A stretch of 64,000 nucleotides of DNA from positions 186,001 to 250,000 of IMG/VR virus record IMGVR_UViG_3300042566_001780; one strand, given 5' to 3'. Positions 14,232 to 53,749 of the stretch are shown here, piece after piece. The notes under the pieces are model-generated. The model saw nothing but the letters and a program-made list of their open reading frames with translations. It had not been told where the DNA came from and ran no database searches. How positions within the stretch are numbered: the first letter of the stretch is position 1; the number at the start of each line of letters is the position of its first letter. The translations under genes were made by a program, and so were the position numbers.

Positions 14232-14768
14232 ATGATCAGGGCCATTGTAGCAGTTGATGCATCTAACGCCATTGGATGGTCTAATGGCGATTTGCCTTGG
14301 AAGATTCCTTATGATCTGAAAAGATTCAAGGAATTGACTAGTGGCTCTACAATAGCCATGGGATCAAACACCTGGAAGTCCCTGAATCGCCCTGAAGGCC
14401 TTCCTAATAGACGCAATGTGGTTATTAGCTCCCAAGAACGAGAGTCTCTGAATGCTTCTGGTGACATCCAGATAATCAAATCTATTGAAGATCTTTCAGA
14501 GCAAAATGATTACTGGGTAATCGGCGGATCTCAAATCTATGGTAGCTTTTTGGCTCTAGATCTAATTGATGAAATGCACATTACATTTGTCCATGAAAGT
14601 TCAAATGCAGATGTCAAATTTCCAGTTGATTTGTACAATTGGAAATTATTCATGATCCAACAAAGATCAATTGGACGCCCCTGGCAACTAGATGATTTGG
14701 TTATCCCGCAGCTTGGGGTTGACGTACCAATACCAATTACAATTTTGACAGTAAGTAGACAACGCTGA
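14232..14768 (+). CDS. frd: Dihydrofolate reductase
   Basis: AIVAVD..NAIG..GDLPWKIPYDLKRFKELT, MGSNTW.SL, LPNRRNVVIS, VIGGSQIY. Confidence 0.95.
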   Translation: MIRAIVAVDASNAIGWSNGDLPWKIPYDLKRFKELTSGSTIAMGSNTWKSLNRPEGLPNRRNVVISSQERESLNASGDIQIIKSIEDLSEQNDYWVIGGSQIYGSFLALDLIDEMHITFVHESSNADVKFPVDLYNWKLFMIQQRSIGRPWQLDDLVIPQLGVDVPIPITILTVSRQR

Positions 14769-38921: not shown

Positions 38922-41900
38922 TTATCCCTTGACTTCAACTAAGTTAATCTTTGCTACCCACCGAATATTTTTACCATTTTCGCCAGTAACTAATATTCGT
39001 AATGAACCTGCAGTAGTATCTATTGCAACGACTGCTTGCCATGCAGATGTATCTCTTGCTATTATCTGGACATTTGGCGATCCAACAAAAGCAGTACTGC
39101 TGGCCAAGGCATTTCTATCTGCACAACCACTTATTTTCCAAGCAGCAGATTCATTGTCGATATCAGTTCGACGAGCTACTAGATCGATATCGAAAAATAC
39201 TGTGGAGTCAGAGTCAATAGTCACAGTATTTTGAGATGTGATAGCAGATCCGTCAAAAGTTAATTCTGTTTGGACATTTGTTGTAGTAATAGCTCGCGCG
39301 ATGCATAGCATAGATTGAGCATCACCCTGGGAAGAGAAACTTCCAGATGCATAAGCAAAAGCCCCAGTCTTGTTTTTGGTAGTGGATGAATTGCCCAGAG
39401 CAGTAGAATAATTTCCAGATGCAGTGTTATTGAATCCAGCAGAAATTGCATGAGTACCACTTGAAGTATTATTTTCACCACCCAAAATTATTGATTTAGA
39501 TCCAGATGCCACCATAGTAGCCGAAGATCTTGCTACTTGCAAATCAACTGCATTTGCACCACGCTTATTTCCACCAGCACTTGTCGCATCAGCTATGTCA
39601 GTTGCAAAAGAACCTGCACCCTTCGGTCCAATAACTACATCGACATCAGCAAATGCTGTATATGTTGAAGTCAAAGCAGCAATTGGCACTGAAGCGTTGA
39701 TTCCAGTTTCACTTATAGTCTCTTCAAAATAATATAAGTCACTCCCGCCCACATCAATGTCTACCATAGTGGCAGCAGTTATACGGCCTTTAGCATCTAC
39801 AGTAAAAGTTGGTATTTGGGTTGAAGAACCATACGTGCCAATATTGGAGTTGACAGAGGTTAAAGTTAGTGACGATGTTGCATTTGCAGATCCATCAAAT
39901 GTGACTGACCATGAAGCGTCGCCAGTAGCAGATATTGATCTAACAGTCTCTAATTTTGTTGCAGTGGATGCATTACCTGTGAGTGCGCCTGAAATTAATG
40001 GGATAGAAACGACACCGGTAGCACGATCTGCTGATAGCACTGGTCCAATCAATAACCCAGCATTATCATAACGATTGATAACAAAATGATCTGTTATGGC
40101 CGCAGATGAAATATCCCAAACAGATAAGTTGTTTGTTGCTAATATAATCTGGGATTTATTCCCTTCAACGTTAGCTTTATGAATAATTAGATTGGAATTT
40201 CCAGATGCAGTAGAAATCTCTAAACTGCCAGACATCGTATCGCCAGCTTTGTTCACTGGCGTAAATCCTAATGCAGTAGTGATATCAGATGATAAAACTG
40301 TTGAGAGACCAGTCACTAATCCTTTGCCATTTACAGTTATTCTCTTAAATGCATTTGATTCAGGAGAAGAATTCACCGTAGCTAATGTTAGCGCCGCAGA
40401 TACGTTTGCAGTGCCATTAAAATCGACTGTCCACGAAGCATCACCAGTGGCAGTAATTGACCTAGAGGTTTCTAGCTGTGCTGCTTTTGATACAGTACTA
40501 TCAAGATAAGCAATTGTTTTTGTTGTCCATGAAGTTGCTGCAGGTGCAGCATACTTATGATAAATGAGCTGCGATGCTTTACTAAAATAAAGTGAATTCA
40601 TTGATCCGCCAGATGAATCAGTCCATGTAGACAAATCAATCACATCTGCGTATGGGGCATTGTTGTTATCTTCTAATGCCGAGAATCGAACTCGTGCGCC
40701 TTTAGTAAATCCAATTCCTGTACTTGGATTGGACAAATTTCTAACGTCATCAGCTCGTATTGAACCAACTGAAGTACCAGTCAAAAAGTTTGTTTGCGCA
40801 CGTTGTGTAGCATCAGTTAATCCATAACCTGCTATTGTAGTTGGGTTGGTACCACTCGTGACTCTGCCATAAGCATCAGTAGTAACTGAGCGGTAGGAAC
40901 CAGCAGTACCCGCAGTGGCTAAGTCAATAGCATCTGCATTAACCACTATTCTGCCAGAAGTACCAACTGCATCTATTTGGTTGCCAGTTTTTGTTAGACC
41001 TGATCCAGCAATAACTTGTCCAAGGCCATTGAATTGTGTGAAGTTTAATGCTGTGGTACCAATTGCAATTGGATCAGAAGTGGTTAATACCCATCCGCTA
41101 TTTGCATTTTGAGTTCCACCAGTCACAAAAGTATAAAGGCCTGCAGTAACTTCAGCCGAAGCATTTGCATCCAGAGAACGTGTCCATAATCCAGAAGCTA
41201 CTATGTAAATTCCATTCTCAGATGCTGTAGTCTGATTTTTTACCAAGACTCTGTCGCCGGCAACTAATAATATTCCATCTACAGTCTGAATGCCAGACAA
41301 AGTAATATTTGCTGTAGTGGCAACACGCACTGATTGTTTTGTATCTAATCCAGTAATTGCATTGTCAATCGATTGATCAACATATTGCTTGGTAGTAGCA
41401 TGACTAGCAGTTAAAGGTTCAGCAACTGTAACCGGAGAATTAAATTGCCATGAGCCAGTAACACTTGCGGTTGAAGAAACAAATGCTAAATTACCAGCAA
41501 CGGTATTCGTAGAATCAGTTACTGAAAATTCCCATGAATTAATTGAAGGCGTTTTAACTTGTAATTTAGTTATAGAGCCAGCATAATCTGATGGTTGCAA
41601 CTTCAAATAAGGAGTATTTGAAGAAGATGCTCCACTTGTAATAGATTCGGAACCTAATATGGAAATGGTATTACCTTGTAATACCAAAGTACCATTTCCT
41701 GCAGTTGAAGTACCGCCAGTTGCATAGATTTTTGAATCATTACTAACAGAATTTCCACTTGAATGAAAATTGATAGTCGGAGTTCCAATTACTGATAATG
41801 AACCTATGTCAATAGTTGAATCATTATCTGATAATGACATATTGCCAGATAGAGAAATATCGGTTGCACTGAAACTCCCAGTGGCATCTCGTAATACTAT

Positions 41901-43553
41901 TGTATTAGCCGTATTTGTAGATGTAGCATTTGACCCAAGCGTAATTGTATTTGCCGTATCATTATAGGTAGCAGTAATTCCGCCCCCATTCACAAAAACC
42001 GCCCCAACAACATCTTGAACAGATTCAGTAAAATTACTTACTTGGGATGACGTGATGGAAATTGGTGAAGTAGATATTGCAGTCACTAAACCTTTGGCAT
42101 TCACGGTAACAGTCAGGCTGTTTGCCACTCCGCCAAAAGATCCAGTATTTGAGTTGACTGTAGCTAAAGTAATTGGCGAACTCACATTGGCTGATCCGTC
42201 AACTGAAAGTGAAGCTGTTGCATCTCCAGTTAAACTTAGTGTTCTTGCTGTAGACCATTTATCTGCAGTTGCAACATTTCCGGTAGTAGTAGCAATATTG
42301 ACACCGTTGATAGTTGGGGTGAATTTGAAATCAACAATATTGGTAGTTCTTGGAATCGATAATACTAAAGTTTCTGTAGTGCCATTATCTGCCACAGAAA
42401 TTAAATTGAAATTAGAACCAGCATTTGCGCCAGATTCGGCAATGTTATTGACACGCAACACCCATCGTGACAATGTATTTGTGTCAAAAGTAATTTGTCT
42501 ATTTGTTGAAGTAGCTCCGCGAATTCTAAGTTGATTATTAGCCCCGCTTAATGTAGTTACATCACTTGCAGATAATGTCGTAAAAGCACCAGATGAAGCA
42601 GTAGTTGCACCAATTGGCGAATTGTTTATGGTCAATCCAGTAGCAGATCCCCCGGTAATTGTTACAGCATTAGCATCTTGAAATGCCATTGAACCCAAAT
42701 TGACTGTCGTAATAGATGTAGTTCTTCCCTTTGCATCTATAGTGATATTAGGAAAAGATGTTGAGGTGCCATATGTTCCAGCAGTGGCTACAGTAGACAG
42801 TGTCAATATTCCTGCAGCATTTGCAGAACCATCAAAACTAGTTGACCAGGTGGCGTCTCCTGATACGGAAATCGTTCTAGCTGTAGCTAATTTTGTAGCA
42901 GTTGCGGCATTACCAGTAACACTGATCCCATAAGTACCAGTTAATCTTGCAGATGGTACTGTTCCTGATGAGAGATTATCTGCATTCAACGCAGTTACTG
43001 GAATAGTGATGTTGGCAGAACCATTGAAACTTGTAGCCGTGCCAGTAGCAGCTCCAGATAGCGCTATTGTTCTTGCAGTTGCCAGTGTTGCAGCAGTAGT
43101 AGCTGCAATGGATGCGCTATTTGAAACTGCAGTAATTCTACCTTTTGCATCTACAGTAAGAATAGGGATGGCAGATGTAGATCCAAAAGAACCAACATTA
43201 GAATTGACCGTAGCTAATGTGGTAGTAATTGCTGTGGATCCAGAACCAGAAATATCACCGCTAAGTGTAATGTTTTGATTGGCAGTTAAGTAGACATTAG
43301 TGTCTAATACCCAAGTATTAGCACCAGATTTCTTTAAGAATCCAGAAGTACCAGCTAATGCAGCTATAGCATTAAGGTCGGCATCGTATTCCTGAAGCTG
43401 CACCCATCCGCCGTTATAAATAAATAAAGCAGTGAGATCAGTTCTGTAGAATAATTCTCCAAAGCTTGGGATGCTTGGAAAATCTACTCCACCCGCCACA
43501 ACGGCGTTAATAATGCTAGAGCCTTCAATGAGCTTTAAACCATCTGAAAACAT
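38922..43553 (-). CDS. Very large modular fibre protein (1543 aa)
   Basis: Five ARTI..GDA.W..FDGSAN modules; KQSVRVATTANITLSG..DG..LVAGDRVLVKNQ domain. Confidence 0.8.
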   Translation of the reverse strand: MFSDGLKLIEGSSIINAVVAGGVDFPSIPSFGELFYRTDLTALFIYNGGWVQLQEYDADLNAIAALAGTSGFLKKSGANTWVLDTNVYLTANQNITLSGDISGSGSTAITTTLATVNSNVGSFGSTSAIPILTVDAKGRITAVSNSASIAATTAATLATARTIALSGAATGTATSFNGSANITIPVTALNADNLSSGTVPSARLTGTYGISVTGNAATATKLATARTISVSGDATWSTSFDGSANAAGILTLSTVATAGTYGTSTSFPNITIDAKGRTTSITTVNLGSMAFQDANAVTITGGSATGLTINNSPIGATTASSGAFTTLSASDVTTLSGANNQLRIRGATSTNRQITFDTNTLSRWVLRVNNIAESGANAGSNFNLISVADNGTTETLVLSIPRTTNIVDFKFTPTINGVNIATTTGNVATADKWSTARTLSLTGDATASLSVDGSANVSSPITLATVNSNTGSFGGVANSLTVTVNAKGLVTAISTSPISITSSQVSNFTESVQDVVGAVFVNGGGITATYNDTANTITLGSNATSTNTANTIVLRDATGSFSATDISLSGNMSLSDNDSTIDIGSLSVIGTPTINFHSSGNSVSNDSKIYATGGTSTAGNGTLVLQGNTISILGSESITSGASSSNTPYLKLQPSDYAGSITKLQVKTPSINSWEFSVTDSTNTVAGNLAFVSSTASVTGSWQFNSPVTVAEPLTASHATTKQYVDQSIDNAITGLDTKQSVRVATTANITLSGIQTVDGILLVAGDRVLVKNQTTASENGIYIVASGLWTRSLDANASAEVTAGLYTFVTGGTQNANSGWVLTTSDPIAIGTTALNFTQFNGLGQVIAGSGLTKTGNQIDAVGTSGRIVVNADAIDLATAGTAGSYRSVTTDAYGRVTSGTNPTTIAGYGLTDATQRAQTNFLTGTSVGSIRADDVRNLSNPSTGIGFTKGARVRFSALEDNNNAPYADVIDLSTWTDSSGGSMNSLYFSKASQLIYHKYAAPAATSWTTKTIAYLDSTVSKAAQLETSRSITATGDASWTVDFNGTANVSAALTLATVNSSPESNAFKRITVNGKGLVTGLSTVLSSDITTALGFTPVNKAGDTMSGSLEISTASGNSNLIIHKANVEGNKSQIILATNNLSVWDISSAAITDHFVINRYDNAGLLIGPVLSADRATGVVSIPLISGALTGNASTATKLETVRSISATGDASWSVTFDGSANATSSLTLTSVNSNIGTYGSSTQIPTFTVDAKGRITAATMVDIDVGGSDLYYFEETISETGINASVPIAALTSTYTAFADVDVVIGPKGAGSFATDIADATSAGGNKRGANAVDLQVARSSATMVASGSKSIILGGENNTSSGTHAISAGFNNTASGNYSTALGNSSTTKNKTGAFAYASGSFSSQGDAQSMLCIARAITTTNVQTELTFDGSAITSQNTVTIDSDSTVFFDIDLVARRTDIDNESAAWKISGCADRNALASSTAFVGSPNVQIIARDTSAWQAVVAIDTTAGSLRILVTGENGKNIRWVAKINLVEVKG

Positions 43554-44818: not shown

Positions 44819-46735
44819 TTACCGTAATTCGTGCCAAGCTCTAATTGGGCCATCTGGCAAATTATACCAGTGGTTAGGTGGAACCACGGTAGTAATATGT
44901 TCCCATTCTCCAGAATCACCGTCTGCCTGGTACATGTTAACATAGGTGGTTGTTGAAACCCCGACATAAATATTACCCGATCCACCAACATCAATCCAAA
45001 TATTTAAAGCAATAGTTCTTCCCGTAGTATTCTGATACCACGTTCCTGCAGATCTAGTCACAGCTTGCCAAGTTTGTCCAACCCCCAATGCATTAGCCGC
45101 TGTTCCTGCAGTTAGCGCGTTACCTGCATTAGTGGCATATGTGGCATTTGCACTGTTGCCAGTAATATCTATATCCCAGGTGCCACTTGCTCCGGTGCCG
45201 GTAAGACTAGGAGCACCAATAGTGTTGTAGCTGACTGTTCTTGCAGTATTTCCATTAAAGGTAGTACCACTTGCTACACCAGCTCCGCTATTATTAAATG
45301 TTAACGCTGCACTAGTTTGCGCGGTTATTGTTATGTTAGCACTTCCATTAAAACTTACACCATTAATGGTTCTAGCGTTAGCTAACACGTTTGCAGTATT
45401 AGCGGCGATTGATGTCTGCGTAGATACTGCAGTAATTCTGCCTTTACCGTCAACTGTAATCACCGGGATTGCAGACGCAGATCCAAAAGTCCCATTATTT
45501 GCATTGACTGTTGTCAATGTCAACGTGCCGCTAACGTTTGCTGCCCCGTTAAAGCTGACTGACCAAGCTGCATCACCGGTGGCAGCTATGGTTCTTGCGG
45601 TTGTTAGCTGATTTGCAGTATCGGCAATAGCAGCCGTTGAAATAGGAACTTGTACAACACCAGTTACCCGACCTTTATTGTCGACAGTGAGTTGCGGTAT
45701 CAGCGTAGACGATCCGAAAGTACCAGCATTAGCATTTACGGTGTTCAATACCAAGTCAGAGCTGACATTTTCAGATCCATTAAAATTAACAGACCAAGCA
45801 GCATCACCAGTAGCAGCTATGTTTCTAGCTGTTGCGAGTGAATTTGCTGTAGCTGCAGTGACGGAAGTAGTAGAAACACCGGTAACTCTACCTTTACTAT
45901 CGAGCGTAATGACTGGTATTAAGGATGAAGAACCATATGTACCAGCAGTTGCTACTTCAGCTAGTGTGAGAGCTGAAGAGGCATTTGCTGAGCCGTCGAA
46001 TGTAGTAGACCAAGTACCGTCGCCTGTTATTGAAATCGTTCTTGCTGTAGCAAGTTTAGTGGCATTCGTGGCATTTGTTGCTGTTGATGCAGATGTTGCT
46101 GAACCTACTGCCAGAGTTGATTGAGATGCCCAGGTTGGGGCTCCAGTGCCACCAGATAACAGAACCTGTCCTGATGCTCCGACACCGCTAATTGCATATG
46201 TAGATGCTGCGCTATATACAATTGCTCCTGCAGCAACCGAAGTAGAACCGGTACCGCCCTTTGCAACTGACAGGGTACCACCAATATTAGAAAGATTTAA
46301 GTTCGCCTCAACTACATCTAGAATCGGGTTACCAGAAACACCAGATGGATTCGTAATACTAAGACGAGAAGAACCAGATACCAGGGTTCTAGATGCTGAA
46401 GTACCGACACCGGTTTTGACATAAAAACCAGTTACTGCTTGATTGATTAATGCTGATAATTCTGCATTGACCTGTTGGTAGGCTGAAGCTGGTAATCCAC
46501 CTAGAGTGTCGGCGCCAATTTGGGAGCTGATTGATCTAACCCATCCCAAAGCAGGTTGATCACCAAATCCAGCATTAGCGTCTGGCAGCAAACCAAAGAA
46601 ATACAGACCTGCCGATCCTTCTACCGAGTCTACAGTTTTATAGAACAGTGATCCATCGAAAGTTAAAGCGGGTTCTGGCAGTACAGATCCGTATGGTATA
46701 ATCGCGCCGCCGTTAAAGGTTTTATTTGTCGTCAT
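44819..46735 (-). CDS. Tail fibre / receptor-binding protein
   Basis: Four ARTI-type modules; tip LGVGQTWQAVTRSAGTWYQNTTGRTI...VVPPNHWY; followed by a chaperone. Confidence 0.8.
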   Translation of the reverse strand: MTTNKTFNGGAIIPYGSVLPEPALTFDGSLFYKTVDSVEGSAGLYFFGLLPDANAGFGDQPALGWVRSISSQIGADTLGGLPASAYQQVNAELSALINQAVTGFYVKTGVGTSASRTLVSGSSRLSITNPSGVSGNPILDVVEANLNLSNIGGTLSVAKGGTGSTSVAAGAIVYSAASTYAISGVGASGQVLLSGGTGAPTWASQSTLAVGSATSASTATNATNATKLATARTISITGDGTWSTTFDGSANASSALTLAEVATAGTYGSSSLIPVITLDSKGRVTGVSTTSVTAATANSLATARNIAATGDAAWSVNFNGSENVSSDLVLNTVNANAGTFGSSTLIPQLTVDNKGRVTGVVQVPISTAAIADTANQLTTARTIAATGDAAWSVSFNGAANVSGTLTLTTVNANNGTFGSASAIPVITVDGKGRITAVSTQTSIAANTANVLANARTINGVSFNGSANITITAQTSAALTFNNSGAGVASGTTFNGNTARTVSYNTIGAPSLTGTGASGTWDIDITGNSANATYATNAGNALTAGTAANALGVGQTWQAVTRSAGTWYQNTTGRTIALNIWIDVGGSGNIYVGVSTTTYVNMYQADGDSGEWEHITTVVPPNHWYNLPDGPIRAWHELR

Positions 46736-46779
46736 AGGTCAATCTGCCCTGGTAAGCATTCTAATCGAGGTGTTTCATT

Positions 46780-46787
46780 CTATTTAG
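46780..46787 (-). promoter_or_regulatory. Late-promoter-like box CTAAATAG
   Basis: Head of the minus-strand fibre operon. Confidence 0.65.
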
Positions 46788-46864
46788 CAATTTTTGAAAG
46801 AAAAACCCTAAAGCTAGACATTGTGGTCTGCTCCTAAAATGAAGAACTTCTAGGTATCTGTGCA

Positions 46865-46873
46865 TGTTAAAAT
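46865..46873 (+). promoter_or_regulatory. Extended -10 element TGTTAAAAT
   Basis: Upstream of the AGGAG RBS and ATG 46901. Confidence 0.5.
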
Positions 46874-46900
46874 TGCTTTTTGCACTTACAAGGAGAACCT

Positions 46901-47881
46901 ATGACAGTGAATGCACAAGCTATCAACCCAACCTTCGAGCTCAACGCAGATTACCAAAAAGCCATATCTGATCTCATGAATCATGGCTACGAATCTGCTC
47001 CCCGCGGCCAAAAGACCAAAGAAATCATCAACTATTCATTCTCGCTGGTCAACCCACGCAATCGAATTGTTCATTTTCCAGATCGTAAAACTAGTCTAAA
47101 GTACCTACTTGGTGAGTTTATCTGGTACATTTCCGGCAGTGCAGACCCAAAGGGTATTCTTCCCTATGCAAAATTCTGGGACTCTATTCGCAATCCCGAT
47201 GGTACAGTAAATTCCAACTATGGTACTCGATTGTTTGGTCATCATCAAGACAGTCTGGTGACACGCGATGGACAAAAGATGTCTCAATGGCAAGCTGTCA
47301 TTAATATCCTCACTAAGGATAACGATAGCCGTCAAGCTATCGTGAATATTCATATGCCCAGCGATCGCTGGGATGGGAATAAAGATGTTCCATGCACCAT
47401 CTCGCTGCAATTCCTAATTCGTGATTGGCGTCTGCATATGATCGTCACTATGCGAAGTAATGATGTCATTATGGGTACTTCAAATGACATCTTCCAGTTT
47501 ACTATGCTGCAGGAAGCTTTGGCATTGGAGCTTCGTAAAACTATGCCTGCTTTGGAACTCGGTTATTACTACCATAACGCTGGGTCTCTCCATATCTACG
47601 AGCGTCACTTTGAAATGGCCAAAGGAATCATGGAAGATAATCGAAAGCTTGAGCTTTCAATGCGGCCAATGGATTCATTCTCGGATAATGTGCTGACCGG
47701 ATTGGTTGGTGTTGAAGCAGCTTGGCAACATGCTGGAGCACCCAAAGATTTTGACTTTGCTAAAGTTGGAGCATGGCAATTGCTAACTCCATACTGGCAA
47801 GATCTCGTTTTGATGTGTTTTGCTGATGATCATTCTGCAATGCATCGAGTTTTTGCTATTCCGGAAGACGAGGAACATTGA
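46901..47881 (+). CDS. Thymidylate-synthase-fold enzyme of the dCMP-modifying type (gp42-like)
   Basis: KDVPCT, QFLIRD, MRSNDVIMGTSND (Asp where ThyA has Asn), GSLHIYERH. Confidence 0.75.
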   Translation: MTVNAQAINPTFELNADYQKAISDLMNHGYESAPRGQKTKEIINYSFSLVNPRNRIVHFPDRKTSLKYLLGEFIWYISGSADPKGILPYAKFWDSIRNPDGTVNSNYGTRLFGHHQDSLVTRDGQKMSQWQAVINILTKDNDSRQAIVNIHMPSDRWDGNKDVPCTISLQFLIRDWRLHMIVTMRSNDVIMGTSNDIFQFTMLQEALALELRKTMPALELGYYYHNAGSLHIYERHFEMAKGIMEDNRKLELSMRPMDSFSDNVLTGLVGVEAAWQHAGAPKDFDFAKVGAWQLLTPYWQDLVLMCFADDHSAMHRVFAIPEDEEH

Positions 47882-47882
47882 A

Positions 47883-48149
47883 ATGTCAGGTGGATCCTTT
47901 GACTATGCTTATTACAAAATTTCAGATTTTGGTGATAGTCTTGAAGCTAAACTTCTTGCTTATGATCCAGATGATTGGAACACAGAATTTGTCAAGTCAC
48001 TGGATCCATCTACTGTAGCACTTTTGAAACAGATTGCTAAAGAAGCCCAAACGCTTGGACCAAAGGCAAGAGCAGTCGAATGGCTATTTTCCGGTGACTA
48101 TGGAGAGCAAACTTTTCTTGATGTCATTAGCAAAATTGAACAAAAATGA
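47883..48149 (+). CDS. Conserved phage hypothetical protein (MSGGSFDY)
   Basis: Typical N-terminus and VEWLFSGDYGE. Confidence 0.65.
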   Translation: MSGGSFDYAYYKISDFGDSLEAKLLAYDPDDWNTEFVKSLDPSTVALLKQIAKEAQTLGPKARAVEWLFSGDYGEQTFLDVISKIEQK

Positions 48150-49885
48150 ATTACGAAAAACAAATTCTTGAAGCTTATGATTTTCTAGGCTTCAAACCTC
48201 GGGGAAATCAGGTTGACAACATCAGTGAAATTGTAACAGCATTTCGAGATGATGGGTTTAGCTCTGTTACGTTATCCGCCCCAACTGGTACTGGTAAATC
48301 CATTATTGGTGCAGTAACAGCTGAAGTTTTGCATAAGCTCGAAAGTCCTGACCTCCATGTTGGTGCTAGCTTTCTGTTGTCACCAACCAATATTCTTAGC
48401 GAGCAATATTTCAAGACCTTCCAAGAAGGCCGTGACCCTCTTGATACTCGATTTCGAATGATTAAAGGCGCAGCTAATTTCCCGTGCGCTGCACTTTCTA
48501 CAGATACTGAGCCACAAACTGCAGAGATGTGCGCGCTTCGATTGTTCCAAAAGTCTGGTGAACAATCAATGATTGACACCTTTTGCAATGGATGTGAATA
48601 TGCATTGCAGAAACGACTGCGCGATCGTTCTCGCCACTTGATCACAAATTATGCATACTATTTCATTGATAGAATGTATACACAGATGATGGCTAAAAGA
48701 ACTGTTTGCGTATATGATGAAGCACATTTGATCAATGATCTTTTTACTGAGCACAATGCCATTTATGTCAGTGACTCTCGGTTAAAGAAGATGTCGGAAG
48801 AAATTCTTGCAAATCTTTCTATTAGCGATGTTGGTGTATTCAAAAAGATCAAAGATGTCACTAACCTCGTCAAAGAAGGTAAGGTGGCAAAATCCAATTA
48901 CAAAGATGTGCTGCTAACTCTTGCAGAAGTTTATGGCATCGTAACTGAACTTGCTCAGAATGCTGCAGATGCAGCAGGAAATGATCATAAGCGCTATATT
49001 GCCATGTCAAAGTTGTCCAAGAAATACTTTGGACTCGGTTGTAAAATTGGCGATTTGTTTGAATACAACTACGATCATGCATTTGATTTCAAACCGGCCA
49101 ATCCAAAATATAATCAATCTGAAAATGAGCTGAGTGTAAAGCCTATCTTTGTAGCTGACATGTTTGGGGTGCTGAATAATGCAAAGTACAATTTGTTGAT
49201 GTCTGGCACACTTGGCGAAGTTTATGCTAATCGTACTCTGACTCTAGAAAATAACAAACACATTCGCTTGGCACCAACTTTTCCAACTGAGAATAAGAAG
49301 GTCGTATTCTACAAACCACAGGCATTAAGCAAAGATTCTCTGCAGTTGAATCAGGTAGCAACTAAACTAAAAGCTGCGTGCCAAGAGATTGTCAAATATC
49401 ATACTGACAAAAAAGAGCGAGGTATTATTTTGACTCCGTCATTTGCGTTGTCTGAAATGATTGCCGATATGATTTCAAAAGCAAATCTTCCAGTTAGAAT
49501 TTTTGAACATCATAAAGGCGATAAACTTAGCCTTGCGCTGAACAGATTTAAAGATTATTCTGGTGGTCCAGCTGTTATGATCACTGCTTCTGGCTTTGAA
49601 GGCATGGACCTGCCTGGTGATTTGAGCCGCTATCAGATTTTAGTGAAAGCTCCGTATGCATCATTAGGAGAAGCACGTGTTAAATTGATCTTGGAAAAAT
49701 ACCCAGATCTTTATAAGCTGCTTTGTCTAATGAAGATGGTGCAAGGTGCAGGTCGTAGTGTGCGTTCGCCGACTGACTATGCTACTACGTACATCCTTGA
49801 TTCAAATGCCCAGCGCATTTGGACTGATAAGATCAACGAGTGGCGTGATGAATTCTCTATCAGCTTCACCTCCATCCTAGAATGA
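48146..49885 (+). CDS. DinG/Rad3-like SF2 helicase with probable Fe-S Cys residues
   Basis: APTGTGKS, DEAH, LMSGTL, EGMDLPGD, QGAGRSVRS. Confidence 0.9.
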   Translation: MNYEKQILEAYDFLGFKPRGNQVDNISEIVTAFRDDGFSSVTLSAPTGTGKSIIGAVTAEVLHKLESPDLHVGASFLLSPTNILSEQYFKTFQEGRDPLDTRFRMIKGAANFPCAALSTDTEPQTAEMCALRLFQKSGEQSMIDTFCNGCEYALQKRLRDRSRHLITNYAYYFIDRMYTQMMAKRTVCVYDEAHLINDLFTEHNAIYVSDSRLKKMSEEILANLSISDVGVFKKIKDVTNLVKEGKVAKSNYKDVLLTLAEVYGIVTELAQNAADAAGNDHKRYIAMSKLSKKYFGLGCKIGDLFEYNYDHAFDFKPANPKYNQSENELSVKPIFVADMFGVLNNAKYNLLMSGTLGEVYANRTLTLENNKHIRLAPTFPTENKKVVFYKPQALSKDSLQLNQVATKLKAACQEIVKYHTDKKERGIILTPSFALSEMIADMISKANLPVRIFEHHKGDKLSLALNRFKDYSGGPAVMITASGFEGMDLPGDLSRYQILVKAPYASLGEARVKLILEKYPDLYKLLCLMKMVQGAGRSVRSPTDYATTYILDSNAQRIWTDKINEWRDEFSISFTSILE

Positions 49886-49941: not shown

Positions 49942-51117
49942 ATGTCGGAAGATATTGATGATTTTATAAGTGGGCTTTTGTCTTCTTCAAGACCATCAAA
50001 AAGCCAAAGATCTGGCATTCGAGGTATTCGTTCTGCAGATGAGCGAGCAGTTAAAACGCGAAGATATCGAACTGCGGGAATGTCAAAAATTGGTTTACCG
50101 ACTGCGTTAGACGACCCACAATTTTTTAAGGCTGGTATGGAAAACAAAGACTCTGTTATTTTTGGTGCGTATGGTGTAGATGATTGGCTAAGCAGCACAT
50201 TCCTGCAACAAAGCATTCGAGATGGTATTACGACCATCATGAAGTCCGGCACCTGGATTATTCCAGCTAACTGGGATTTTGTTACATGGTGCGCTACTAT
50301 TTCTCCACGGTACAACTTCATTAGCGCCAATCGTGCAATGATCTTTACAAATTGGGGCCAAATTGAAGTTGGTCTCGGCCGCCAAAAGATTGAAGTCGAG
50401 ATCAACGGTAAAATCAAAGAAGTCAATCAGTTTATTGACTTGCTGCATACTCAGTTCAAGCAGGCAGAAAACCTAATTGAATGGGTCTATGGCCAACGCG
50501 GTGAAAGCATCAGCGTGCCACTGAATTACCGTCCTGCTATTAATGAGGCGTACCCTTGGATCAATGGTGGGCTCGACGCCTATATTGATGCCTACATGAA
50601 TTCTGATGCCAGTGTTCTTATTCTTATTGGGGCACCGGGAACTGGTAAGACAACGTTTGTTAAAAACCTTATCCATCGCTCTGGTGCAGATGCAAAGGTT
50701 ACCTATGATGTCAACGTCATGCAGAGTGATGGCATCTTTGCGTCTTTCATTGAAGGTCGTGAAAAATTCATGATCATGGAAGATGCTGATGCCTTCCTCA
50801 AGAGTCGGGCTGATGGCAATACTATGATGCACCGTTTCCTGAACGTGTCAGATGGTCTCATCTCTGCATCAAATAAGAAGCTGGTGTTTAGCACGAATCT
50901 TCCATCGGTGCGTGATATTGATGATGCTCTTATGCGTCCAGGCCGGTGCTTTGATGTGATGGAGTTCCGACCTCTTACTCGAGATGAGGCTATTGCAGTG
51001 TGTGACAAGACTGGCCGTCCCCATCCAGGTGATGGTTCCAGTTTCACTCTTGCATCTCTCTTTGGGGATTCTCCAAATACTTCTAAAGTTAAAACGAAGA
51101 AAGTTGGTTTTGTGTAA
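49942..51117 (+). CDS. AAA+ ATPase (BCS1-like, conserved in large phages)
   Basis: GAPGTGKT, IMEDAD, FLNVSDG, STN, DALMRPGRCF. Confidence 0.9.
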   Translation: MSEDIDDFISGLLSSSRPSKSQRSGIRGIRSADERAVKTRRYRTAGMSKIGLPTALDDPQFFKAGMENKDSVIFGAYGVDDWLSSTFLQQSIRDGITTIMKSGTWIIPANWDFVTWCATISPRYNFISANRAMIFTNWGQIEVGLGRQKIEVEINGKIKEVNQFIDLLHTQFKQAENLIEWVYGQRGESISVPLNYRPAINEAYPWINGGLDAYIDAYMNSDASVLILIGAPGTGKTTFVKNLIHRSGADAKVTYDVNVMQSDGIFASFIEGREKFMIMEDADAFLKSRADGNTMMHRFLNVSDGLISASNKKLVFSTNLPSVRDIDDALMRPGRCFDVMEFRPLTRDEAIAVCDKTGRPHPGDGSSFTLASLFGDSPNTSKVKTKKVGFV

Positions 51118-51674
51118 TGAAGAACTTTATTATTGAAGGTCTCGATAGACTTGGTAAAGATACGCTGATTAAAAATATCCAGCACAAAACTGGATATAAG
51201 ATGGTGTGTCATCGATCTAAGCCTCTTGCCCTTGATTATTATCGCAAAGAAAATAATAGTCTGCTTCGATTCCAACAAGAGTGTTTTGCAAATGATATGC
51301 GTCTTCTTTGGATGTCTGAAGATACATCGGCATTTGACGGTGTTATCTTCAATCGTTCGTGGTTAGGCGAATTTGTATATGCGCCCATGTATCGGGGGTA
51401 TTCTGCGGAATACATTTTCGATTATGAAAATGTATATTCTCTTGAGAAGCTCAAACAAACTACGCTCGTGCTTTTGACTGAAGATTTTTCTAAGTCAAAG
51501 CATTTTATTGATGATGGGTTGAGCTTCGATATTTCAAAGCGCGTAGAAGAACAAAATAGCTTTGAACTTGCATTTGAGCGTTCGCGAATTCCTTGTAAGA
51601 AAAAGATTAGTGTTACTGCAGATAATGGCAGTTTCAAAGATCCACTTTCTATTTTGTCTGAAGTTTTTGTTTGA
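51117..51674 (+). CDS. dNMP/thymidylate-kinase-like P-loop kinase
   Basis: IIEGLDRLGKDT; FNRSWLGEFVYAPMYRG. Confidence 0.75.
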   Translation: MKNFIIEGLDRLGKDTLIKNIQHKTGYKMVCHRSKPLALDYYRKENNSLLRFQQECFANDMRLLWMSEDTSAFDGVIFNRSWLGEFVYAPMYRGYSAEYIFDYENVYSLEKLKQTTLVLLTEDFSKSKHFIDDGLSFDISKRVEEQNSFELAFERSRIPCKKKISVTADNGSFKDPLSILSEVFV

Positions 51675-51685
51675 AGGAAAATGTC

Positions 51686-52129
51686 ATGTTGATTAATCAA
51701 ATCAAAAAAGATCAAGTTGAAGCTCGCAAAAACAAAGATTCTGTGAAAGCCAATCTACTCACTACGCTAATTGGTGAAGCTGAAATGGTTGGCAAAAACA
51801 ATGGCAACCGTGCTCCATCAGATGCTGAAGTACAAGTAGTAGTTAAGAAGTTCATTAAGGGAATTGATGAAATTCTGACTCTGACTTTTGACAAAGACAT
51901 TCAGAATTTCTTGACTGAGCTAGAAATCCTCAAGTCATATTTGCCAGAACAGCTGAGCCAAGAGCAACTTGCATTTGAGATTAGCAAAATCATCGGCTCT
52001 CTTACTGTTGCAAATCCTTCTCAGGCAATTGGTGTTGTGATGAAGGAGCTTAATGCAAAGTTCTCTGGGAAATTTGATTCCAAACAAGCTTCCATTTTGA
52101 TCAAAGAAAATCTGGTACCCCAATCATGA
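51686..52129 (+). CDS. GatB/YqeY-domain protein
   Basis: IKKDQVEARK...LLTTL; ELEILKSYLPEQLSQE; IGVVMKEL. Confidence 0.85.
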   Translation: MLINQIKKDQVEARKNKDSVKANLLTTLIGEAEMVGKNNGNRAPSDAEVQVVVKKFIKGIDEILTLTFDKDIQNFLTELEILKSYLPEQLSQEQLAFEISKIIGSLTVANPSQAIGVVMKELNAKFSGKFDSKQASILIKENLVPQS

Positions 52130-52764
52130 TCGTCTTTGGTCAACCCACGTTGATCACGTTAACCAGCCCATCTTGCGGTGGAAAAAGCTGGTTAATGGAG
52201 CATCTGATTGCTGAATGGAATTTTCAAAGAATCATCAGCACTACTGATAGAGCTCCACGAGTTGGAGAAGTCGACAAGGTGCATTATTTCTTTATGACTA
52301 CTGAAGAATCTAAGGAGCTAGAGAAGCAAAAGAAATTTGCTGAGCTAGTCACTTATAATGGCGTTCGTTATGGTGTTACTCATGACGAAATGGTTCGCAA
52401 AGTAGCAAAGCCAAATAGCGCTCCTCCTATTGTTATTCTTGAACCTTCTGGATTGAAGGAATACGAGAAGTATTGCAAGAAAAACAATTGGAGAATGTTC
52501 AAGATCTTTGTTGACACTCCAGAAGAAATTCGCATTCTTAGACTCGCAGATCGCACAACAAAAGACATCATTGCTAAACCAAATGCTTCTTATGAAGAGG
52601 TCAAGCAATGCATAGTGTCAAACAATAGTCGGTTGCAGGCAATAATTGAAAAAGAGCGTTCTTGGTATAAGAAAAGTAACTGGGATTTGATTGTACCAGG
52701 CACTTCACTAAGCGATGCAAAACATCTTATTCTAGACGCAGCAAAAAGGTTTAACAATGATTGA
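52126..52764 (+). CDS. Guanylate-kinase-like protein
   Basis: SPSCGGKS, STTDRAPRVGEVDKVHYFF, YNGVRYG. Confidence 0.85.
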   Translation: MIVFGQPTLITLTSPSCGGKSWLMEHLIAEWNFQRIISTTDRAPRVGEVDKVHYFFMTTEESKELEKQKKFAELVTYNGVRYGVTHDEMVRKVAKPNSAPPIVILEPSGLKEYEKYCKKNNWRMFKIFVDTPEEIRILRLADRTTKDIIAKPNASYEEVKQCIVSNNSRLQAIIEKERSWYKKSNWDLIVPGTSLSDAKHLILDAAKRFNND

Positions 52765-53269
52765 AGTTCAAGCGCCAAATAAGTTCAAAGTTAAGATGGC
52801 ACACTGGACCGTTTTTCTTGCTGGGTCCATTGAAATGGGTGCTGCTGTTAAATGGCAAAATGAAGCTGTTGAGCAACTTAAACCATACAATGATGAGTTG
52901 GTGTTGTTCAATCCTAGACGAGATGATTGGGATTCTTCTTGGGTTCAATCGATTGATAATCCCCAATTTGCTGAGCAAGTGAATTGGGAAATTGAACACA
53001 TCACTAAATCAGACATTGTGTTCTTCTATTTTGCTGGTGACACAAAATCTCCAATCACTCTAATGGAGCTCGGCATTATTGCGGGAATGCATATGCGATA
53101 TGCGACATCAGATGTCATTGTTGTTTGTGAACCAAATTTTTGGCGAAAAGGAAATGTCGACATTCTCTGTGATACAATCAATGTACCGCTTTATGATAAT
53201 CTAAAAGATGGTCTAAGTCATCTTGAAAATTATCTTGTCACTAATGGTGGGTTCATTCCTGGAGCGTGA
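52757..53269 (+). CDS. Nucleoside 2-deoxyribosyltransferase-like protein
   Basis: VFLAGSIEMG..WQ, FNPRRDDWD, QVNWE, SPITLMELG. Confidence 0.85.
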   Translation: MIEVQAPNKFKVKMAHWTVFLAGSIEMGAAVKWQNEAVEQLKPYNDELVLFNPRRDDWDSSWVQSIDNPQFAEQVNWEIEHITKSDIVFFYFAGDTKSPITLMELGIIAGMHMRYATSDVIVVCEPNFWRKGNVDILCDTINVPLYDNLKDGLSHLENYLVTNGGFIPGA

Positions 53270-53408: not shown

Positions 53409-53749
53409 GTGACTGTGACTTTCGAATCAAAGCTGAACATATTTGTGAAGATTGCGGACATGTTCAGATGGTTCATGGACTAGTAACGTCTGACAATGGC
53501 GTCTATTTTGGCAGTGCCCATAATTGGTGTGATGTTTGTGATACGGGATTGCCGAAGTTTAGTTGGAAGATTGTTGTTCCCGCAGGGAACATTGACATCA
53601 CCTTCTTCATGAAAGGTCTTCCGAAAAAGATGGCATTTCAAATCGGCAATCAAATTTTCACCTTGGACTATGAACCTGAAGAACCATCTGAGTTTTTCTT
53701 TATGGCCAAAATGTTGACAAATGCTATGAAAAAGATTGGCGTAAACTAA
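53405..53749 (+). CDS. Hypothetical protein with a CxxC...CxxC Zn site
   Basis: CEDCGH and CDVC. Confidence 0.55.
   Translation: MSDCDFRIKAEHICEDCGHVQMVHGLVTSDNGVYFGSAHNWCDVCDTGLPKFSWKIVVPAGNIDITFFMKGLPKKMAFQIGNQIFTLDYEPEEPSEFFFMAKMLTNAMKKIGVN

What the first reader, a model, noticed from the sequence alone, without database searches (positions are those of the whole stretch)
46901..47881. Thymidylate-synthase homolog with the dCMP-specifying Asp suggests a modified-cytosine genome
Seen: MRSNDVIMGTSND, QFLIRD and GSLHIYERH. Established: ThyA has Asn (PFN) at this position and T4 dCMP hydroxymethylase has Asp (GFRND); the Asn-to-Asp change switches TS toward dCMP. Inference: the enzyme makes hm5-, m5- or hydroxy-dCMP. 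The DHFR at 14232 would be needed if it is a methylase that oxidises folate, but that gene could equally serve a canonical ThyA outside this window.
Basis: partly seen in the sequence, partly recalled or inferred. Interest (0 to 1): 0.62.

Follow-up and report, generated by a model that had tools for sequence, protein, structure and literature searches.

The report
Jumbo-phage dCMP hydroxymethylase gene
An uncultured freshwater jumbo phage carries, besides an ordinary thymidylate synthase, a second copy with every residue known to make phage T4's enzyme turn dCMP into 5-hydroxymethyl-dCMP. The phage therefore very probably replaces cytosine in its DNA with hydroxymethylcytosine, probably sugar-coated, which is a known anti-restriction strategy seen here in a new lineage.

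Summary
Window 46901-47881 (+) encodes a 326-aa thymidylate-synthase homolog with Asp at the E. coli ThyA Asn177 position.

**What the enzyme is.** Its residues match T4 gp42, the dCMP hydroxymethylase:
- Asp three residues before the catalytic Cys.
- The NSNYG motif.
- Thr after the Cys.
- Asp169 retained.
- The deoxy-type Ser167 and Arg126.

These exclude the 5-hydroxy-dCMP synthase type (Asn169). They also argue against the Xp12 methylase type and the CMP-specific MilA type, although the fold with its extra C-terminal helical domain is MilA-like. All 119 closest relatives keep this signature.

**Genome context.** The 292-kb phage record also has a canonical ThyA 28.6 kb beyond the window's end, which accounts for the DHFR. 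It has a dCMP deaminase and a MazG-like pyrophosphohydrolase as well. Two NMP-kinase-like genes lie in the same gene block. All ten related jumbo-phage records checked carry both TS paralogs.

**Likely decoration.** A GT-B glycosyltransferase plus a UDP-galactopyranose mutase lies inside this block in sister phages. In 63 of 80 other phage loci it sits next to a TS homolog, 61 of them reading the gp42-type signature. I therefore predict glycosylated, possibly galactofuranosyl, hmC.

This is a new member of a known kind. No chemical evidence exists.

The parts
46901..47881 (+). TS-family gene predicted to encode dCMP 5-hydroxymethylase (326 aa). Key codons: Ser105 47213, Asp162 47384, Cys165 47393, Thr166 47396, Ser186 47456, Asp188 47462, Asp196 47486.
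   Evidence: Pfam PF00303 at E 9.6e-29. Best solved relatives by sequence are MilA at 8e-32 and T4 gp42 at 5e-19. The residue signature is identical to T4 gp42. AF2 model has pLDDT 92.3, and the best fold match is MilA over the full length.
47883..48149 (+). Small conserved ORF (88 aa) of unknown function. It starts two bases after the TS stop codon.
   Evidence: Weak match to phrog_6724. Homologs sit at the same position in relatives L007 (66% identity) and L021 (39%).
48146..49885 (+). XPD/DinG-like helicase. It is the invariable downstream neighbour of the TS homolog; a role in base modification is not implied.
   Evidence: Pfam Helicase_C_2 at 7e-18, plus DEAD and ResIII. It is syntenic in every related locus long enough to show it.
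49942..51117 (+). AAA ATPase, a conserved member of the block.
   Evidence: Pfam AAA at 1.9e-9; synteny.
51117..51674 (+). Thymidylate-kinase-like P-loop kinase (185 aa). It is a candidate kinase for 5hm-dCMP.
   Evidence: phrog_761 'thymidylate kinase' at 1.9e-11. The relative's ortholog hits Pfam Thymidylate_kin weakly. It is conserved in 21 of 23 related loci. A Tmk-like 'nucleotide kinase' also flanks the TS homologs of RB69, DLP3 and RL38J1 (PMC13326640).
51671..52129 (+). YqeY-like protein in the same block. Its role is unknown.
   Evidence: Pfam YqeY at 6e-17.
52126..52764 (+). Guanylate-kinase-like NMP kinase (212 aa), a second candidate (d)NMP kinase.
   Evidence: Pfam Guanylate_kin at 1.1e-14; phrog_1815 at 4e-30; guanylate kinases in the PDB at 1e-10. 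In sister phages the GT and GLF genes lie between the Tmk-like gene and this gene.
52757..53269 (+). Nucleoside 2-deoxyribosyltransferase-like protein (PF15891). Its role is unknown, and it is not MilB-like by sequence.
   Evidence: Pfam Nuc_deoxyri_tr2 at 7.7e-30. The only PDB relative is an uncharacterised protein, 4mcj.
14232..14768 (+). Dihydrofolate reductase. It most simply partners the canonical ThyA encoded outside the window.
   Evidence: Pfam DHFR_1 at 1.9e-33. Canonical ThyA lies at genome 278605-279435. Hydroxymethylases release THF, not DHF (PMC6400193).

Best explanation
**The enzyme.** The gene encodes a folate-dependent dCMP 5-hydroxymethylase, the functional equivalent of T4 gp42. 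It is built on the longer MilA-type scaffold.

**Proposed mechanism, by homology.**
1. Cys165 attacks C6 of dCMP, whose cytosine is read by Asp196.
2. The methylene of 5,10-methylene-THF is transferred to C5.
3. A water molecule activated by Asp162 (with Ser105) then adds to the exocyclic methylene, in place of the hydride transfer seen in thymidylate synthase. The products are 5hm-dCMP and THF.

**Proposed pathway (inferred).**
1. The NMP-kinase-like proteins in the same block, plus a host NDP kinase, raise 5hm-dCMP to the triphosphate.
2. The MazG-like pyrophosphohydrolase lowers the dCTP pool.
3. The dCMP deaminase, canonical ThyA and DHFR supply dTMP separately.
4. The phage polymerase builds hmC-DNA.
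5. A GT-B glycosyltransferase (344 aa, genome 264232-265266) glycosylates the DNA, probably with galactofuranose supplied by the adjacent UDP-galactopyranose mutase.

**Purpose.** Protection from host restriction and other nucleic-acid-targeting defences.

**Shown versus inferred.** Shown here: homology, residues, fold, paralogy and gene linkage. Inferred: activity, degree of C replacement, and the identity of the sugar.
For: **Family and fold.**
- The protein belongs to the TS family.
- The best solved relatives are the cytosine hydroxymethylases MilA and T4 gp42, ahead of any ThyA.
- The AF2 model (pLDDT 92.3) matches MilA over 324 columns, including the C-terminal helical domain.

**Residue signature at E. 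coli positions 143/147/169/177.**
- Query and T4 gp42: D-T-D-D.
- Canonical ThyA: L-H-D-N.
- RB69 5hoC synthase: E-T-N-D.
- Xp12 methylase: N-P-D-D.
- A dUMP hydroxymethylase: D-N-D-N.
- The query also shares the NSNYG motif with T4, and has Ile at the E. coli Trp83 / T4 Val85 position.

**Published basis for these residues.**
- Asp145 and Ser94 of T4dCH activate the water, and D145N makes no 5hm-dCMP (PMC6400193).
- D169N marks 5hodCMP synthases (PMC13326640).
- Ser167 and Arg126 versus Ala and Lys set deoxy versus ribo preference (PMC5175136).

**Conservation.** The signature is invariant in 119 relatives.

**Paralogy and companion genes.**
- 10 of 10 related 150-350 kb records hold both the canonical ThyA and this homolog.
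- The MazG-like gene and the dCMP deaminase are present in 4 of 4 records that are at least 90% complete.
- Two NMP-kinase-like genes lie in the same co-directional block.

**Glycosyltransferase linkage.**
- In 8 of 23 related loci (L009, L023, L027, L028, L030, L036, L037, L040) a GLF homolog lies between the Tmk-like and Gmk-like genes of this block. In 7 of them the GT344 homolog precedes it.
- The GT model's best PDB match is T4 beta-glucosyltransferase: Z 17.4, 297 residues aligned.
- In 63 of 80 IMG/VR loci holding a GT344 homolog, a TS homolog lies in the flanks. In 61 it reads D-T-N-D-D, the gp42 type, and none has Asn169. 60 of the 80 also hold GLF (example L069).

**Experimental precedent in related enzymes.** Enterococcus phages VPE25 and VFW have a TS homolog that matches the query at 34% identity. 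Their DNA was shown by experiment to be glycosylated at cytosines (PMC4999554).
Against: - There is no chemical or enzymatic datum for this phage or any member of its lineage. Only assembled contigs of the runs are held, so reads give no modification signal.
- The residue rules rest on a few characterised enzymes.
- Deep branches of the family tree are unresolved, so orthology with gp42 is not shown.
- Arg127 is Gln throughout the family, and the effect of this change is untested.
- The MazG-like protein has no detectable pairwise similarity to T4 gp56. Its nearest solved relative is DR2231, annotated only as a MazG-like NTP pyrophosphohydrolase.
- The GT's lead over generic GT-B enzymes is only about 1 Z unit, and hhalign against T4 BGT is weak at probability 17%.
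- GLF is present in only 4 of 10 related records. The record itself holds no epimerase and is only 82% complete.
Confidence: 0.75

Rival explanations
1. It is an Xp12-type dCMP methyltransferase. The phage would carry 5-methylcytosine, and the DHFR would recycle the dihydrofolate this enzyme produces.
For: - Asp at position 177 alone is enough to make E. coli TS methylate dCMP (literature cited in PMC8670742).
- A DHFR is present.
- Xp12-group phages also combine DHFR, a dCMP deaminase, a TS homolog and a pyrophosphohydrolase (PMC9206674).
Against: - The query has Asp three residues before the Cys, where Xp12 has Asn. The T4 D145N mutant loses hydroxymethylation.
- Position 147 is Thr as in T4, not Pro as in Xp12.
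- Xp12 TS groups with canonical ThyA at 98/98 support, apart from this family.
- A separate canonical ThyA is conserved in 10 of 10 relatives. The preprint 10.1101/2024.12.05.627091 proposes that Xp12-type phages make dTTP by deaminating 5mdCTP, bypassing a second thymidylate synthase.
- A glycosyltransferase linked to the block needs a hydroxyl acceptor.
Confidence: 0.07
2. It is a flavin-dependent 5-hydroxy-dCMP synthase of the RB69 gp48 / DLP3 gp80 type. It would feed ether-linked glycosyl-5-hydroxycytosine.
For: - The characterised 5hodCMP synthases also have Asp177, an acidic residue at 143 and MilA as best structural match (PMC13326640).
- RL38J1, which makes glycosyl-5hoC, encodes a UDP-galactopyranose mutase.
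Against: - The diagnostic D169N change is absent: Asp188 is invariant in 119 relatives.
- RB69 gp48 also differs at positions 80, 173 and 209, where the query keeps the TS/T4 residues.
- None of the TS genes adjacent to GT344 has Asn169.
Confidence: 0.04
3. It is a MilA/BcmA-like CMP hydroxymethylase. It would make hmCMP for a free base or small molecule (perhaps with the nearby deoxyribosyltransferase-like protein as N-glycosidase) or for RNA, and not for DNA.
For: - MilA is the best sequence and fold match, and shares the extra C-terminal helical domain.
- A PF15891 protein lies 5 kb downstream in the same block.
Against: - The two residues that give MilA its ribo preference (Ala176, Lys133) are Ser186 and Arg144 here, as in T4 and TS. 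MilA A176S/K133R loses CMP activity (PMC5175136).
- The PF15891 protein shows no MilB match in the PDB.
- The context is a lytic jumbo phage with a dCMP deaminase, ThyA and a MazG-like gene, together with a GT whose top fold match is T4 BGT.
Confidence: 0.04
4. 5hm-dCMP is made but is only an intermediate. For example, it could be deaminated to 5hm-dUMP for a thymidine-type hypermodification, or cytosine could be replaced only in part.
For: - A dCMP deaminase is present.
- Some phage deaminases act on C5-modified cytidylates (10.1101/2024.12.05.627091).
- No proven dCTPase is present.
Against: - The deaminase gene lies 120 kb from the TS homolog.
- A canonical ThyA supplies dTMP.
- The linked GT family sits beside gp42-type genes, as beta-gt does in T4.
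Confidence: 0.07

Closest known systems
Phage T4 gp42, dCMP hydroxymethylase (PDB 1B5E, 6A9A)
   Same: - Same superfamily.
- Identical catalytic and specificity residues: Asp three residues before the Cys, the Cys-Thr pair, the NSNYG motif, MRSND, Asp at position 177, and His and Tyr at positions 207 and 209.
- Same genomic logic: a separate ThyA, DHFR, dCMP deaminase, an NTP pyrophosphohydrolase, a kinase and a GT-B transferase.
   Different: - Only about 27% identity.
- The query is 80 residues longer, with a C-terminal helical domain that T4 lacks.
- Arg127 is Gln.
- The candidate dCTPase and kinases are not orthologs of gp56 and gp1.
- The candidate sugar donor is UDP-Galf rather than UDP-Glc.
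MilA, CMP 5-hydroxymethylase of Streptomyces rimofaciens (PDB 5B6D, 5JNH)
   Same: - It is the best sequence match (E 8e-32) and the best fold match (324 columns, TMq 0.77).
- It shares the five-helix C-terminal extension described for MilA (PMC5175136).
- It has Asp at positions 143 and 177.
   Different: - MilA's ribo-specifying Ala176 and Lys133 are Ser and Arg here.
- MilA works in antibiotic biosynthesis in a bacterium, not in a phage nucleotide pathway.
RB69 gp48 / DLP3 gp80 / RL38J1 gp216, 5-hydroxy-dCMP synthases (PMC13326640)
   Same: - They are phage TS homologs with Asp177 and an acidic residue at 143.
- They are flanked by a Tmk-like kinase, glycosyltransferases and sugar-nucleotide enzymes.
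- RL38J1 also encodes a UDP-galactopyranose mutase.
   Different: - They have Asn169 and use a flavin and O2.
- The query keeps Asp169 and the folate-type residues.
Xanthomonas phage Xp12 TS homolog, dCMP methyltransferase
   Same: Asp at position 177 and dCMP as substrate. The genome also holds a DHFR and a dCMP deaminase.
   Different: - It has Asn at position 143 and Pro at 147.
- It clusters with canonical ThyA.
- No second TS-family gene is annotated in the 50 of 63.8 kb of Xp12 read.
Bacillus phage G gp319, Ralstonia phage RsoM2USA gp10, Enterococcus phages VPE25/VFW
   Same: - They are the closest homologs in isolated phages, at 34-36% identity.
- gp319 and gp10 have the same D-T-D-D signature; the VPE25/VFW genes were not aligned.
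- Phage G gp319 is flanked by an annotated alpha-glucosyltransferase, a Tmk and a dCMP deaminase.
- VPE25/VFW DNA is glycosylated at cytosine by experiment (PMC4999554).
   Different: They come from different phage lineages and hosts. No activity data were found for gp319 or gp10.

Membership tests
Thymidylate synthase / pyrimidine hydroxymethylase superfamily (PF00303) | Significant profile match and the TS fold | tested here: met
   PF00303 scores 100.8 bits against a cut-off of 24.3. The AF2 model has pLDDT 92.3, and Foldseek gives E 1e-16 to 1e-23 against TS, dCH and MilA.
Thymidylate synthase / pyrimidine hydroxymethylase superfamily (PF00303) | Catalytic Cys146, Glu58, Tyr94, Arg21, Arg166, His207 and Tyr209 | tested here: met
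   All are present and invariant in 119 relatives.
T4 gp42-type dCMP hydroxymethylase | Asp at E. coli position 177 (T4 Asp179), which specifies cytosine | tested here: met
   Asp196, invariant in the family.
T4 gp42-type dCMP hydroxymethylase | Asp or Glu three residues before the catalytic Cys (T4 Asp145), which activates the water | tested here: met
   Asp162 in the sequence KDVPC, invariant in the family. The rule is from PMC6400193.
T4 gp42-type dCMP hydroxymethylase | Ser or Thr equivalent to T4 Ser94 (NSNYG motif) | tested here: met
   The NSNYG motif is identical to T4's. Ser105 is invariant in 61 of 61 aligned sequences.
T4 gp42-type dCMP hydroxymethylase | Deoxyribose-type residues Ser167 and Arg126' | tested here: met
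   Ser186 and Arg144. The rule is from PMC5175136.
T4 gp42-type dCMP hydroxymethylase | Converts dCMP plus methylene-THF to 5hm-dCMP plus THF | not testable with these tools
   This needs an enzyme assay or the in vivo plasmid-DNA LC-MS assay.
5-hydroxy-dCMP synthase (RB69 gp48 type) | Asn at position 169 (D169N) | tested here: not met
   Asp188 is invariant, whereas RB69 gp48 shows Asn in the same column.
Xp12-type dCMP methyltransferase | A non-acidic residue at position 143 and kinship with canonical ThyA | tested here: not met
   The query has Asp where Xp12 has Asn. Xp12 groups with ThyA at 98/98 support, with the query family outside that group.
MilA/BcmA-type CMP hydroxymethylase | Extra C-terminal helical domain | tested here: met
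   The model aligns to MilA over 324 of 326 residues, with helices at 262-317.
MilA/BcmA-type CMP hydroxymethylase | Ala176 and Lys133', which give the ribo preference | tested here: not met
   Ser186 and Arg144 instead.
Canonical thymidylate synthase ThyA | Asn177, His147 and Leu143 | tested here: not met
   The query has Asp, Thr and Asp at these positions. The genome's real ThyA (genome 278605-279435) has Asn, His and Leu.
T4-type DNA hmC glycosyltransferase (for the linked 344-aa protein, outside the window) | GT-B fold resembling T4 BGT or AGT, and linkage to a dCMP hydroxymethylase gene | tested here: inconclusive
   - The top PDB match is T4 BGT (Z 17.4), but generic GT-B enzymes follow at Z 16.5.
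- hhalign gives probability 17%, and there is no PF09198 match.
- The linkage is strong: 63 of 80 loci hold a TS homolog, 61 reading the gp42-type signature.

The most novel reading that the evidence does not exclude
A widespread, uncharacterised cassette pairs a 344-aa GT-B transferase with a UDP-galactopyranose mutase. An epimerase or a cytidylyltransferase-like gene often accompanies them. The proposal is that this cassette makes 5-(galactofuranosyl-oxymethyl)cytosine, a DNA hypermodification I found no report of in two full-text searches.

The cassette occurs in freshwater jumbo phages such as this one and in many T4-like environmental phages, always in the company of a gp42-type dCMP hydroxymethylase. 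The jumbo-phage enzyme would be a third structural solution for hmC synthesis: a MilA scaffold with deoxy-type specificity residues.
Probability: 0.3. Interest if true: 0.65.

Novelty: new member of a known kind. Interest (0 to 1): 0.42.

Why it matters
Base replacement decides which restriction, CRISPR and other defences a phage escapes. It also decides which laboratory enzymes and sequencing chemistries work on its DNA.

- **New lineage.** The finding places the hmC strategy in an uncultured freshwater jumbo-phage lineage of roughly 290-370 kb. The family has at least 792 members in metagenomes.
- **Residue rules.** It shows that published residue rules can sort TS homologs into hydroxymethyl, hydroxy and methyl types from sequence alone.
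- **Candidate transferase.** It points to a concrete, very common candidate DNA glycosyltransferase, coupled to a mutase and of unknown sugar specificity, that could be tested directly.

The enzyme class itself is textbook, so the gene alone is not surprising.

Tried and rejected
**Searches that found no close relative**
- Nucleotide search of 4 kb against 50,697 phage records gave no match.
- The helicase neighbour finds only about 26%-identical isolated phages, so there is no cultured relative to borrow chemistry from.

**Tree**
- The tree of 24 TS-family sequences left the deep nodes unresolved because of long branches.
- It supports only the separation from the Xp12 plus ThyA group. It does not support orthology with gp42.

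**Families searched for in the record and not found**
- dUTPase (PF00692) and MazG (PF03819). Only a PRA-PH/MazG-like protein was found.
- Carbamoyltransferase (PF02543).
- T4 beta-GT (PF09198). The controls did not ring either, so this result is uninformative.
- Epimerase (PF01370).
- C5 DNA methyltransferase (PF00145).
- The record is 82% complete, so these absences are weak evidence.

**Pairwise comparisons**
- The candidate dCTPase shows no pairwise similarity to T4 gp56.
- The Tmk-like protein shows none to RB69 p045.
- hhalign of the GT family against T4 BGT gave probability 17% over 55 columns only.

**MilA/MilB-like pairing**
- I considered a pairing with the PF15891 protein and set it aside. 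There is no MilB match, and the TS homolog has deoxy-type residues.

**Sequencing runs**
- The stretch is held by lake, freshwater and aquatic metagenomes, with smaller shares in wastewater, soil and faecal runs. All are kept as assembled contigs only.
- Read laying could therefore show neither modification nor expression, and I did not run it.

**Not used**
- Only genetic code 11 was used.
- The large representative-protein search and the complex predictor were not needed.

**Promoter and terminator scan**
- The scan around the gene found nothing above the shuffled expectation.
Full report
**1. The observation**

Window 46901-47881 (+) is an intact ORF of 326 codons. It has an ATG start and an AAGGAG ribosome-binding site five bases upstream.

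The protein matches Pfam Thymidylat_synt at E 9.6e-29 and PHROG thymidylate-synthase families at E 8e-48. It scores far below the cut-offs of every NCBIfam ThyA equivalog, for example 67.7 bits against 327. It is therefore a true but divergent family member.

By sequence, the best solved relatives are the two cytosine hydroxymethylases. MilA scores E 8e-32 and T4 gp42 scores 5e-19, both ahead of all thymidylate synthases.

**2. Where it sits**

The window is bases 186001-250000 of a 291,687-bp virus record. CheckV puts its completeness at 82%, and it comes from a metagenome assembly. The stretch is found in lake, freshwater and aquatic metagenomes from several studies. No isolated phage is close:
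- The nucleotide search found nothing.
- The best TS-homolog matches in isolates are Ralstonia jumbo phage RsoM2USA and Bacillus phage G, at 34-36% identity.
- The neighbouring helicase finds only about 26% identity.

In metagenomes the family is large, with at least 792 proteins at E <= 1e-10. Many lie on 150-370 kb contigs. This is an uncultured jumbo-phage lineage.

**3. Which reaction**

I aligned the protein with enzymes of known product, using E. coli ThyA numbering.

| Enzyme | 143 | 147 | 169 | 177 |
|---|---|---|---|---|
| E. coli ThyA and the phage's own ThyA | L | H | D | N |
| T4 gp42 (5hm-dCMP) | D | T | D | D |
| RB69 gp48 (5-hydroxy-dCMP) | E | T | N | D |
| Xp12 TS homolog (5-methyl-dCMP) | N | P | D | D |
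| Kuttervirus dUMP hydroxymethylase | D | N | D | N |
| This protein | D | T | D | D |

The protein also shares T4's NSNYG motif exactly. It has Ile where E. coli has Trp83 and T4 has Val85. It keeps Ser167 and Arg126.

The literature gives each of these positions a meaning:
- **Position 177.** Asn versus Asp switches the substrate from dUMP to dCMP (PMC8670742).
- **Position 143 and Ser94.** In T4dCH, Asp145 (three residues before the Cys) together with Ser94 positions and activates the water that replaces hydride transfer. The D145N mutant makes no 5hm-dCMP (PMC6400193).
- **Position 169.** D169N is the signature of the flavin-dependent 5-hydroxy-dCMP synthases (PMC13326640).
- **Positions 167 and 126.** Ser167 and Arg126' versus Ala and Lys decide deoxy versus ribo preference, and MilA A176S/K133R loses CMP activity (PMC5175136).

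Every one of these positions is invariant across the 119 closest relatives and the 61 sequences of alignment A1. The one consistent departure is Arg127 to Gln. Phage G gp319 and the Kuttervirus enzyme share it.

The AlphaFold model has pLDDT 92.3 and pTM 0.90. It superposes on MilA over 324 of 326 residues (TMq 0.77), including the C-terminal helical domain. T4 gp42 and ThyA lack that domain and cover only about 250 residues.

A maximum-likelihood tree leaves the deep nodes unresolved. It does place the Xp12 enzyme with canonical ThyA at 98/98 support, apart from this family.

I conclude that the enzyme is a folate-dependent dCMP 5-hydroxymethylase, with T4-type chemistry on a MilA-type scaffold.

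**4. The rest of the pathway**

Window 14232-14768 is a DHFR (E 1.9e-33). The record has a canonical ThyA at genome 278605-279435, scoring 335 bits, 28.6 kb beyond the window's end. Hydroxymethylases release THF and do not need a DHFR.

The record also encodes:
- A dCMP deaminase at genome 113154-113486.
- A 169-aa PRA-PH/MazG-like nucleotide pyrophosphohydrolase at genome 173604-174113. Its nearest solved relative is the MazG-like NTP pyrophosphohydrolase DR2231. I take it as the candidate dCTPase, although it shows no pairwise similarity to T4 gp56.

Downstream of the TS homolog there is no terminator-like site within the 1.8 kb scanned. The starts and stops of successive genes touch or overlap. 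The co-directional block is, in order:
1. A small ORF.
2. An XPD-like helicase.
3. An AAA ATPase.
4. A thymidylate-kinase-like protein.
5. A YqeY-like protein.
6. A guanylate-kinase-like protein.
7. A deoxyribosyltransferase-like protein.

This order is conserved in related contigs.

Across ten related records of 150-350 kb:
- All ten hold both the canonical ThyA (297-335 bits) and the divergent homolog (76-101 bits). Two paralogs kept side by side throughout a lineage argue for two functions.
- All four records that are at least 90% complete hold the MazG-like gene and the deaminase.

This is the T4 logic, carried out with partly non-orthologous parts.

**5. A linked glycosyltransferase**

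In 8 of 23 related loci (L009, L023, L027, L028, L030, L036, L037, L040) a UDP-galactopyranose mutase homolog lies between the Tmk-like and Gmk-like genes of this same block. In seven of these, a 340-390-aa protein precedes it.

In the present genome the same cassette lies 32 kb downstream, at genome 263575-267014, outside the window. It comprises an unknown protein, a 344-aa protein, GLF (Pfam 2e-54) and a cytidylyltransferase-like protein.

The 344-aa protein has no Pfam match, but other evidence points to a GT-B transferase:
- The ESM Atlas places it among viral GT-B/GT4-like clusters, including one where 40% of members carry the T4 glucosyltransferase family.
- My model (pLDDT 83) has T4 beta-glucosyltransferase as its best PDB match in both Foldseek (E 2e-6) and VIA-align (Z 17.4, 297 residues, rmsd 4.0). 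T4 AGT scores Z 15.5. Generic GT-B enzymes follow within about 1 Z unit.
- The profile comparison with T4 BGT is weak.

The genomic linkage is stronger than the fold evidence. Its closest homologs (65-77% identity, at least 693 in all) sit on contigs of T4-like phages. On one 150-kb contig the order is PRA-PH, then a gp42 ortholog, dCMP deaminase, epimerase, this GT and GLF. This cluster lies among clamp, clamp-loader, RegA and DNA-polymerase genes, which is where T4 keeps gene 42 and beta-gt.

Counts for the 80 IMG/VR loci that hold a homolog of this GT:

| Feature | Loci |
|---|---|
| TS homolog in the flanks, usually 1-2.5 kb upstream | 63 |
| of those, reading D-T-N-D-D at positions 143/147/168/169/177 (the gp42 type) | 61 |
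| TS homolog with Asn169 | 0 |
| GLF also present | 60 |

These loci are not phylogenetically independent, so the counts show recurrence and are not a statistical test.

The cassette here is closer to the T4-like versions than to those of sister jumbo phages (42-48% identity). Together with its displaced position, this suggests exchange between phage groups.

I therefore predict that the hmC is O-glycosylated. Where GLF is present, galactofuranose is the likely sugar. This step is inferred. GLF occurs in only 4 of 10 relatives, so the decoration probably varies between phages.

**6. Comparison with what is known, and novelty**

Phage dCMP hydroxymethylases and glycosyl-hmC are classical, with T4 as the model. 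Several precedents bear on this case:
- TS homologs with Asp177 are already known to mark cytosine-modified contigs in metaviromes (PMC8670742).
- VPE25 and VFW, whose homolog is 34% identical to this one, have glycosylated cytosine by experiment (PMC4999554).
- Phage G's homolog sits among an annotated alpha-glucosyltransferase, a Tmk and a deaminase.

The gene is thus a new member of a known kind. Three things are less ordinary:
- The MilA-type architecture combined with deoxy-type residues.
- The invariant Gln127.
- The GT plus mutase cassette. Two searches of the paper library found no report of it acting on hmC.

The only phage-encoded UDP-galactopyranose mutase discussed in those papers belongs to RL38J1, which modifies 5-hydroxycytosine.

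**7. Limits**

- Nothing here is chemistry.
- The public runs holding this DNA are kept only as assembled contigs. I did not lay reads, and neither expression nor modification could be examined.
- The absences of families were searched in an 82%-complete record.

**Confidence**
- About 0.75 that the enzyme makes 5hm-dCMP for incorporation into phage DNA.
- About 0.5 that the DNA is then glycosylated by the 344-aa protein.
- About 0.3 that the sugar is galactofuranose.

Noticed in passing
window 53749-54582 (+): A 277-aa protein matches Pfam Acb3 (CBASS inhibitor) over its full length at E 5.9e-56, and phrog_7203. It is a candidate anti-CBASS gene a few genes downstream of the nucleotide-metabolism block.
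   Followed up: no
window 7102-8325 (+): A TnpB-like gene (OrfB_IS605 at 3.9e-24, Cas12f1-like TNB domain, HTH_OrfB_IS605) lies inside the phage genome. It is an IS605/IS200-family element or an RNA-guided nuclease relic.
   Followed up: no
genome 263575-267014 (outside the window; L012:13575-17014): The cassette is: unknown 214-aa protein, GT-B transferase (344 aa), UDP-galactopyranose mutase, a 95-aa ORF, and a cytidylyltransferase-like protein. The GT is 65-77% identical to versions in T4-like phage contigs but only 42-48% identical to those of sister jumbo phages. This suggests lateral exchange of the cassette.
   Followed up: partly
L009:18777-19028 and neighbours (related 339-kb contig): In this relative a PP-binding (carrier-protein) gene and an epimerase sit with the GT and GLF genes. 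A cytidylyltransferase-like gene follows. This hints at a more elaborate decoration than a single sugar.
   Followed up: no
genome 155393-157264 (outside the window) versus L007:1426-3297: A resolvase gene (99% identity) and the adjacent 417-aa gene (95% identity) are nearly identical between this genome and a relative whose other genes are only 59-82% identical. This is probably a recently shared mobile element.
   Followed up: no
L007:13003-14713 (relative) versus window 49942-51117: The AAA ATPase that is one gene here is called as two genes in the 76%-identical relative. The second carries a faint intein-splicing hit, so it may be an intein-interrupted allele.
   Followed up: no
window 44819-46735 (-) and 38922-43553 (-): Large tail-fibre-like proteins lie on the minus strand and contain internal repeats of about 45-50 residues (ARTIAATGDAAWSV.FNG...). 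They form the end of the structural module and meet the TS gene head to head at 46736-46900.
   Followed up: no
window 13539-14174 (+): An HD-domain protein (HD_4 at 6e-9) lies just upstream of the DHFR gene. It may be a nucleotide phosphohydrolase belonging to nucleotide metabolism.
   Followed up: no
window 52757-53269 (+): A PF15891 nucleoside 2-deoxyribosyltransferase-like protein is conserved at the end of the block in many relatives. Its only solved relative is uncharacterised (4mcj). Its role beside the kinases is unexplained.
   Followed up: partly
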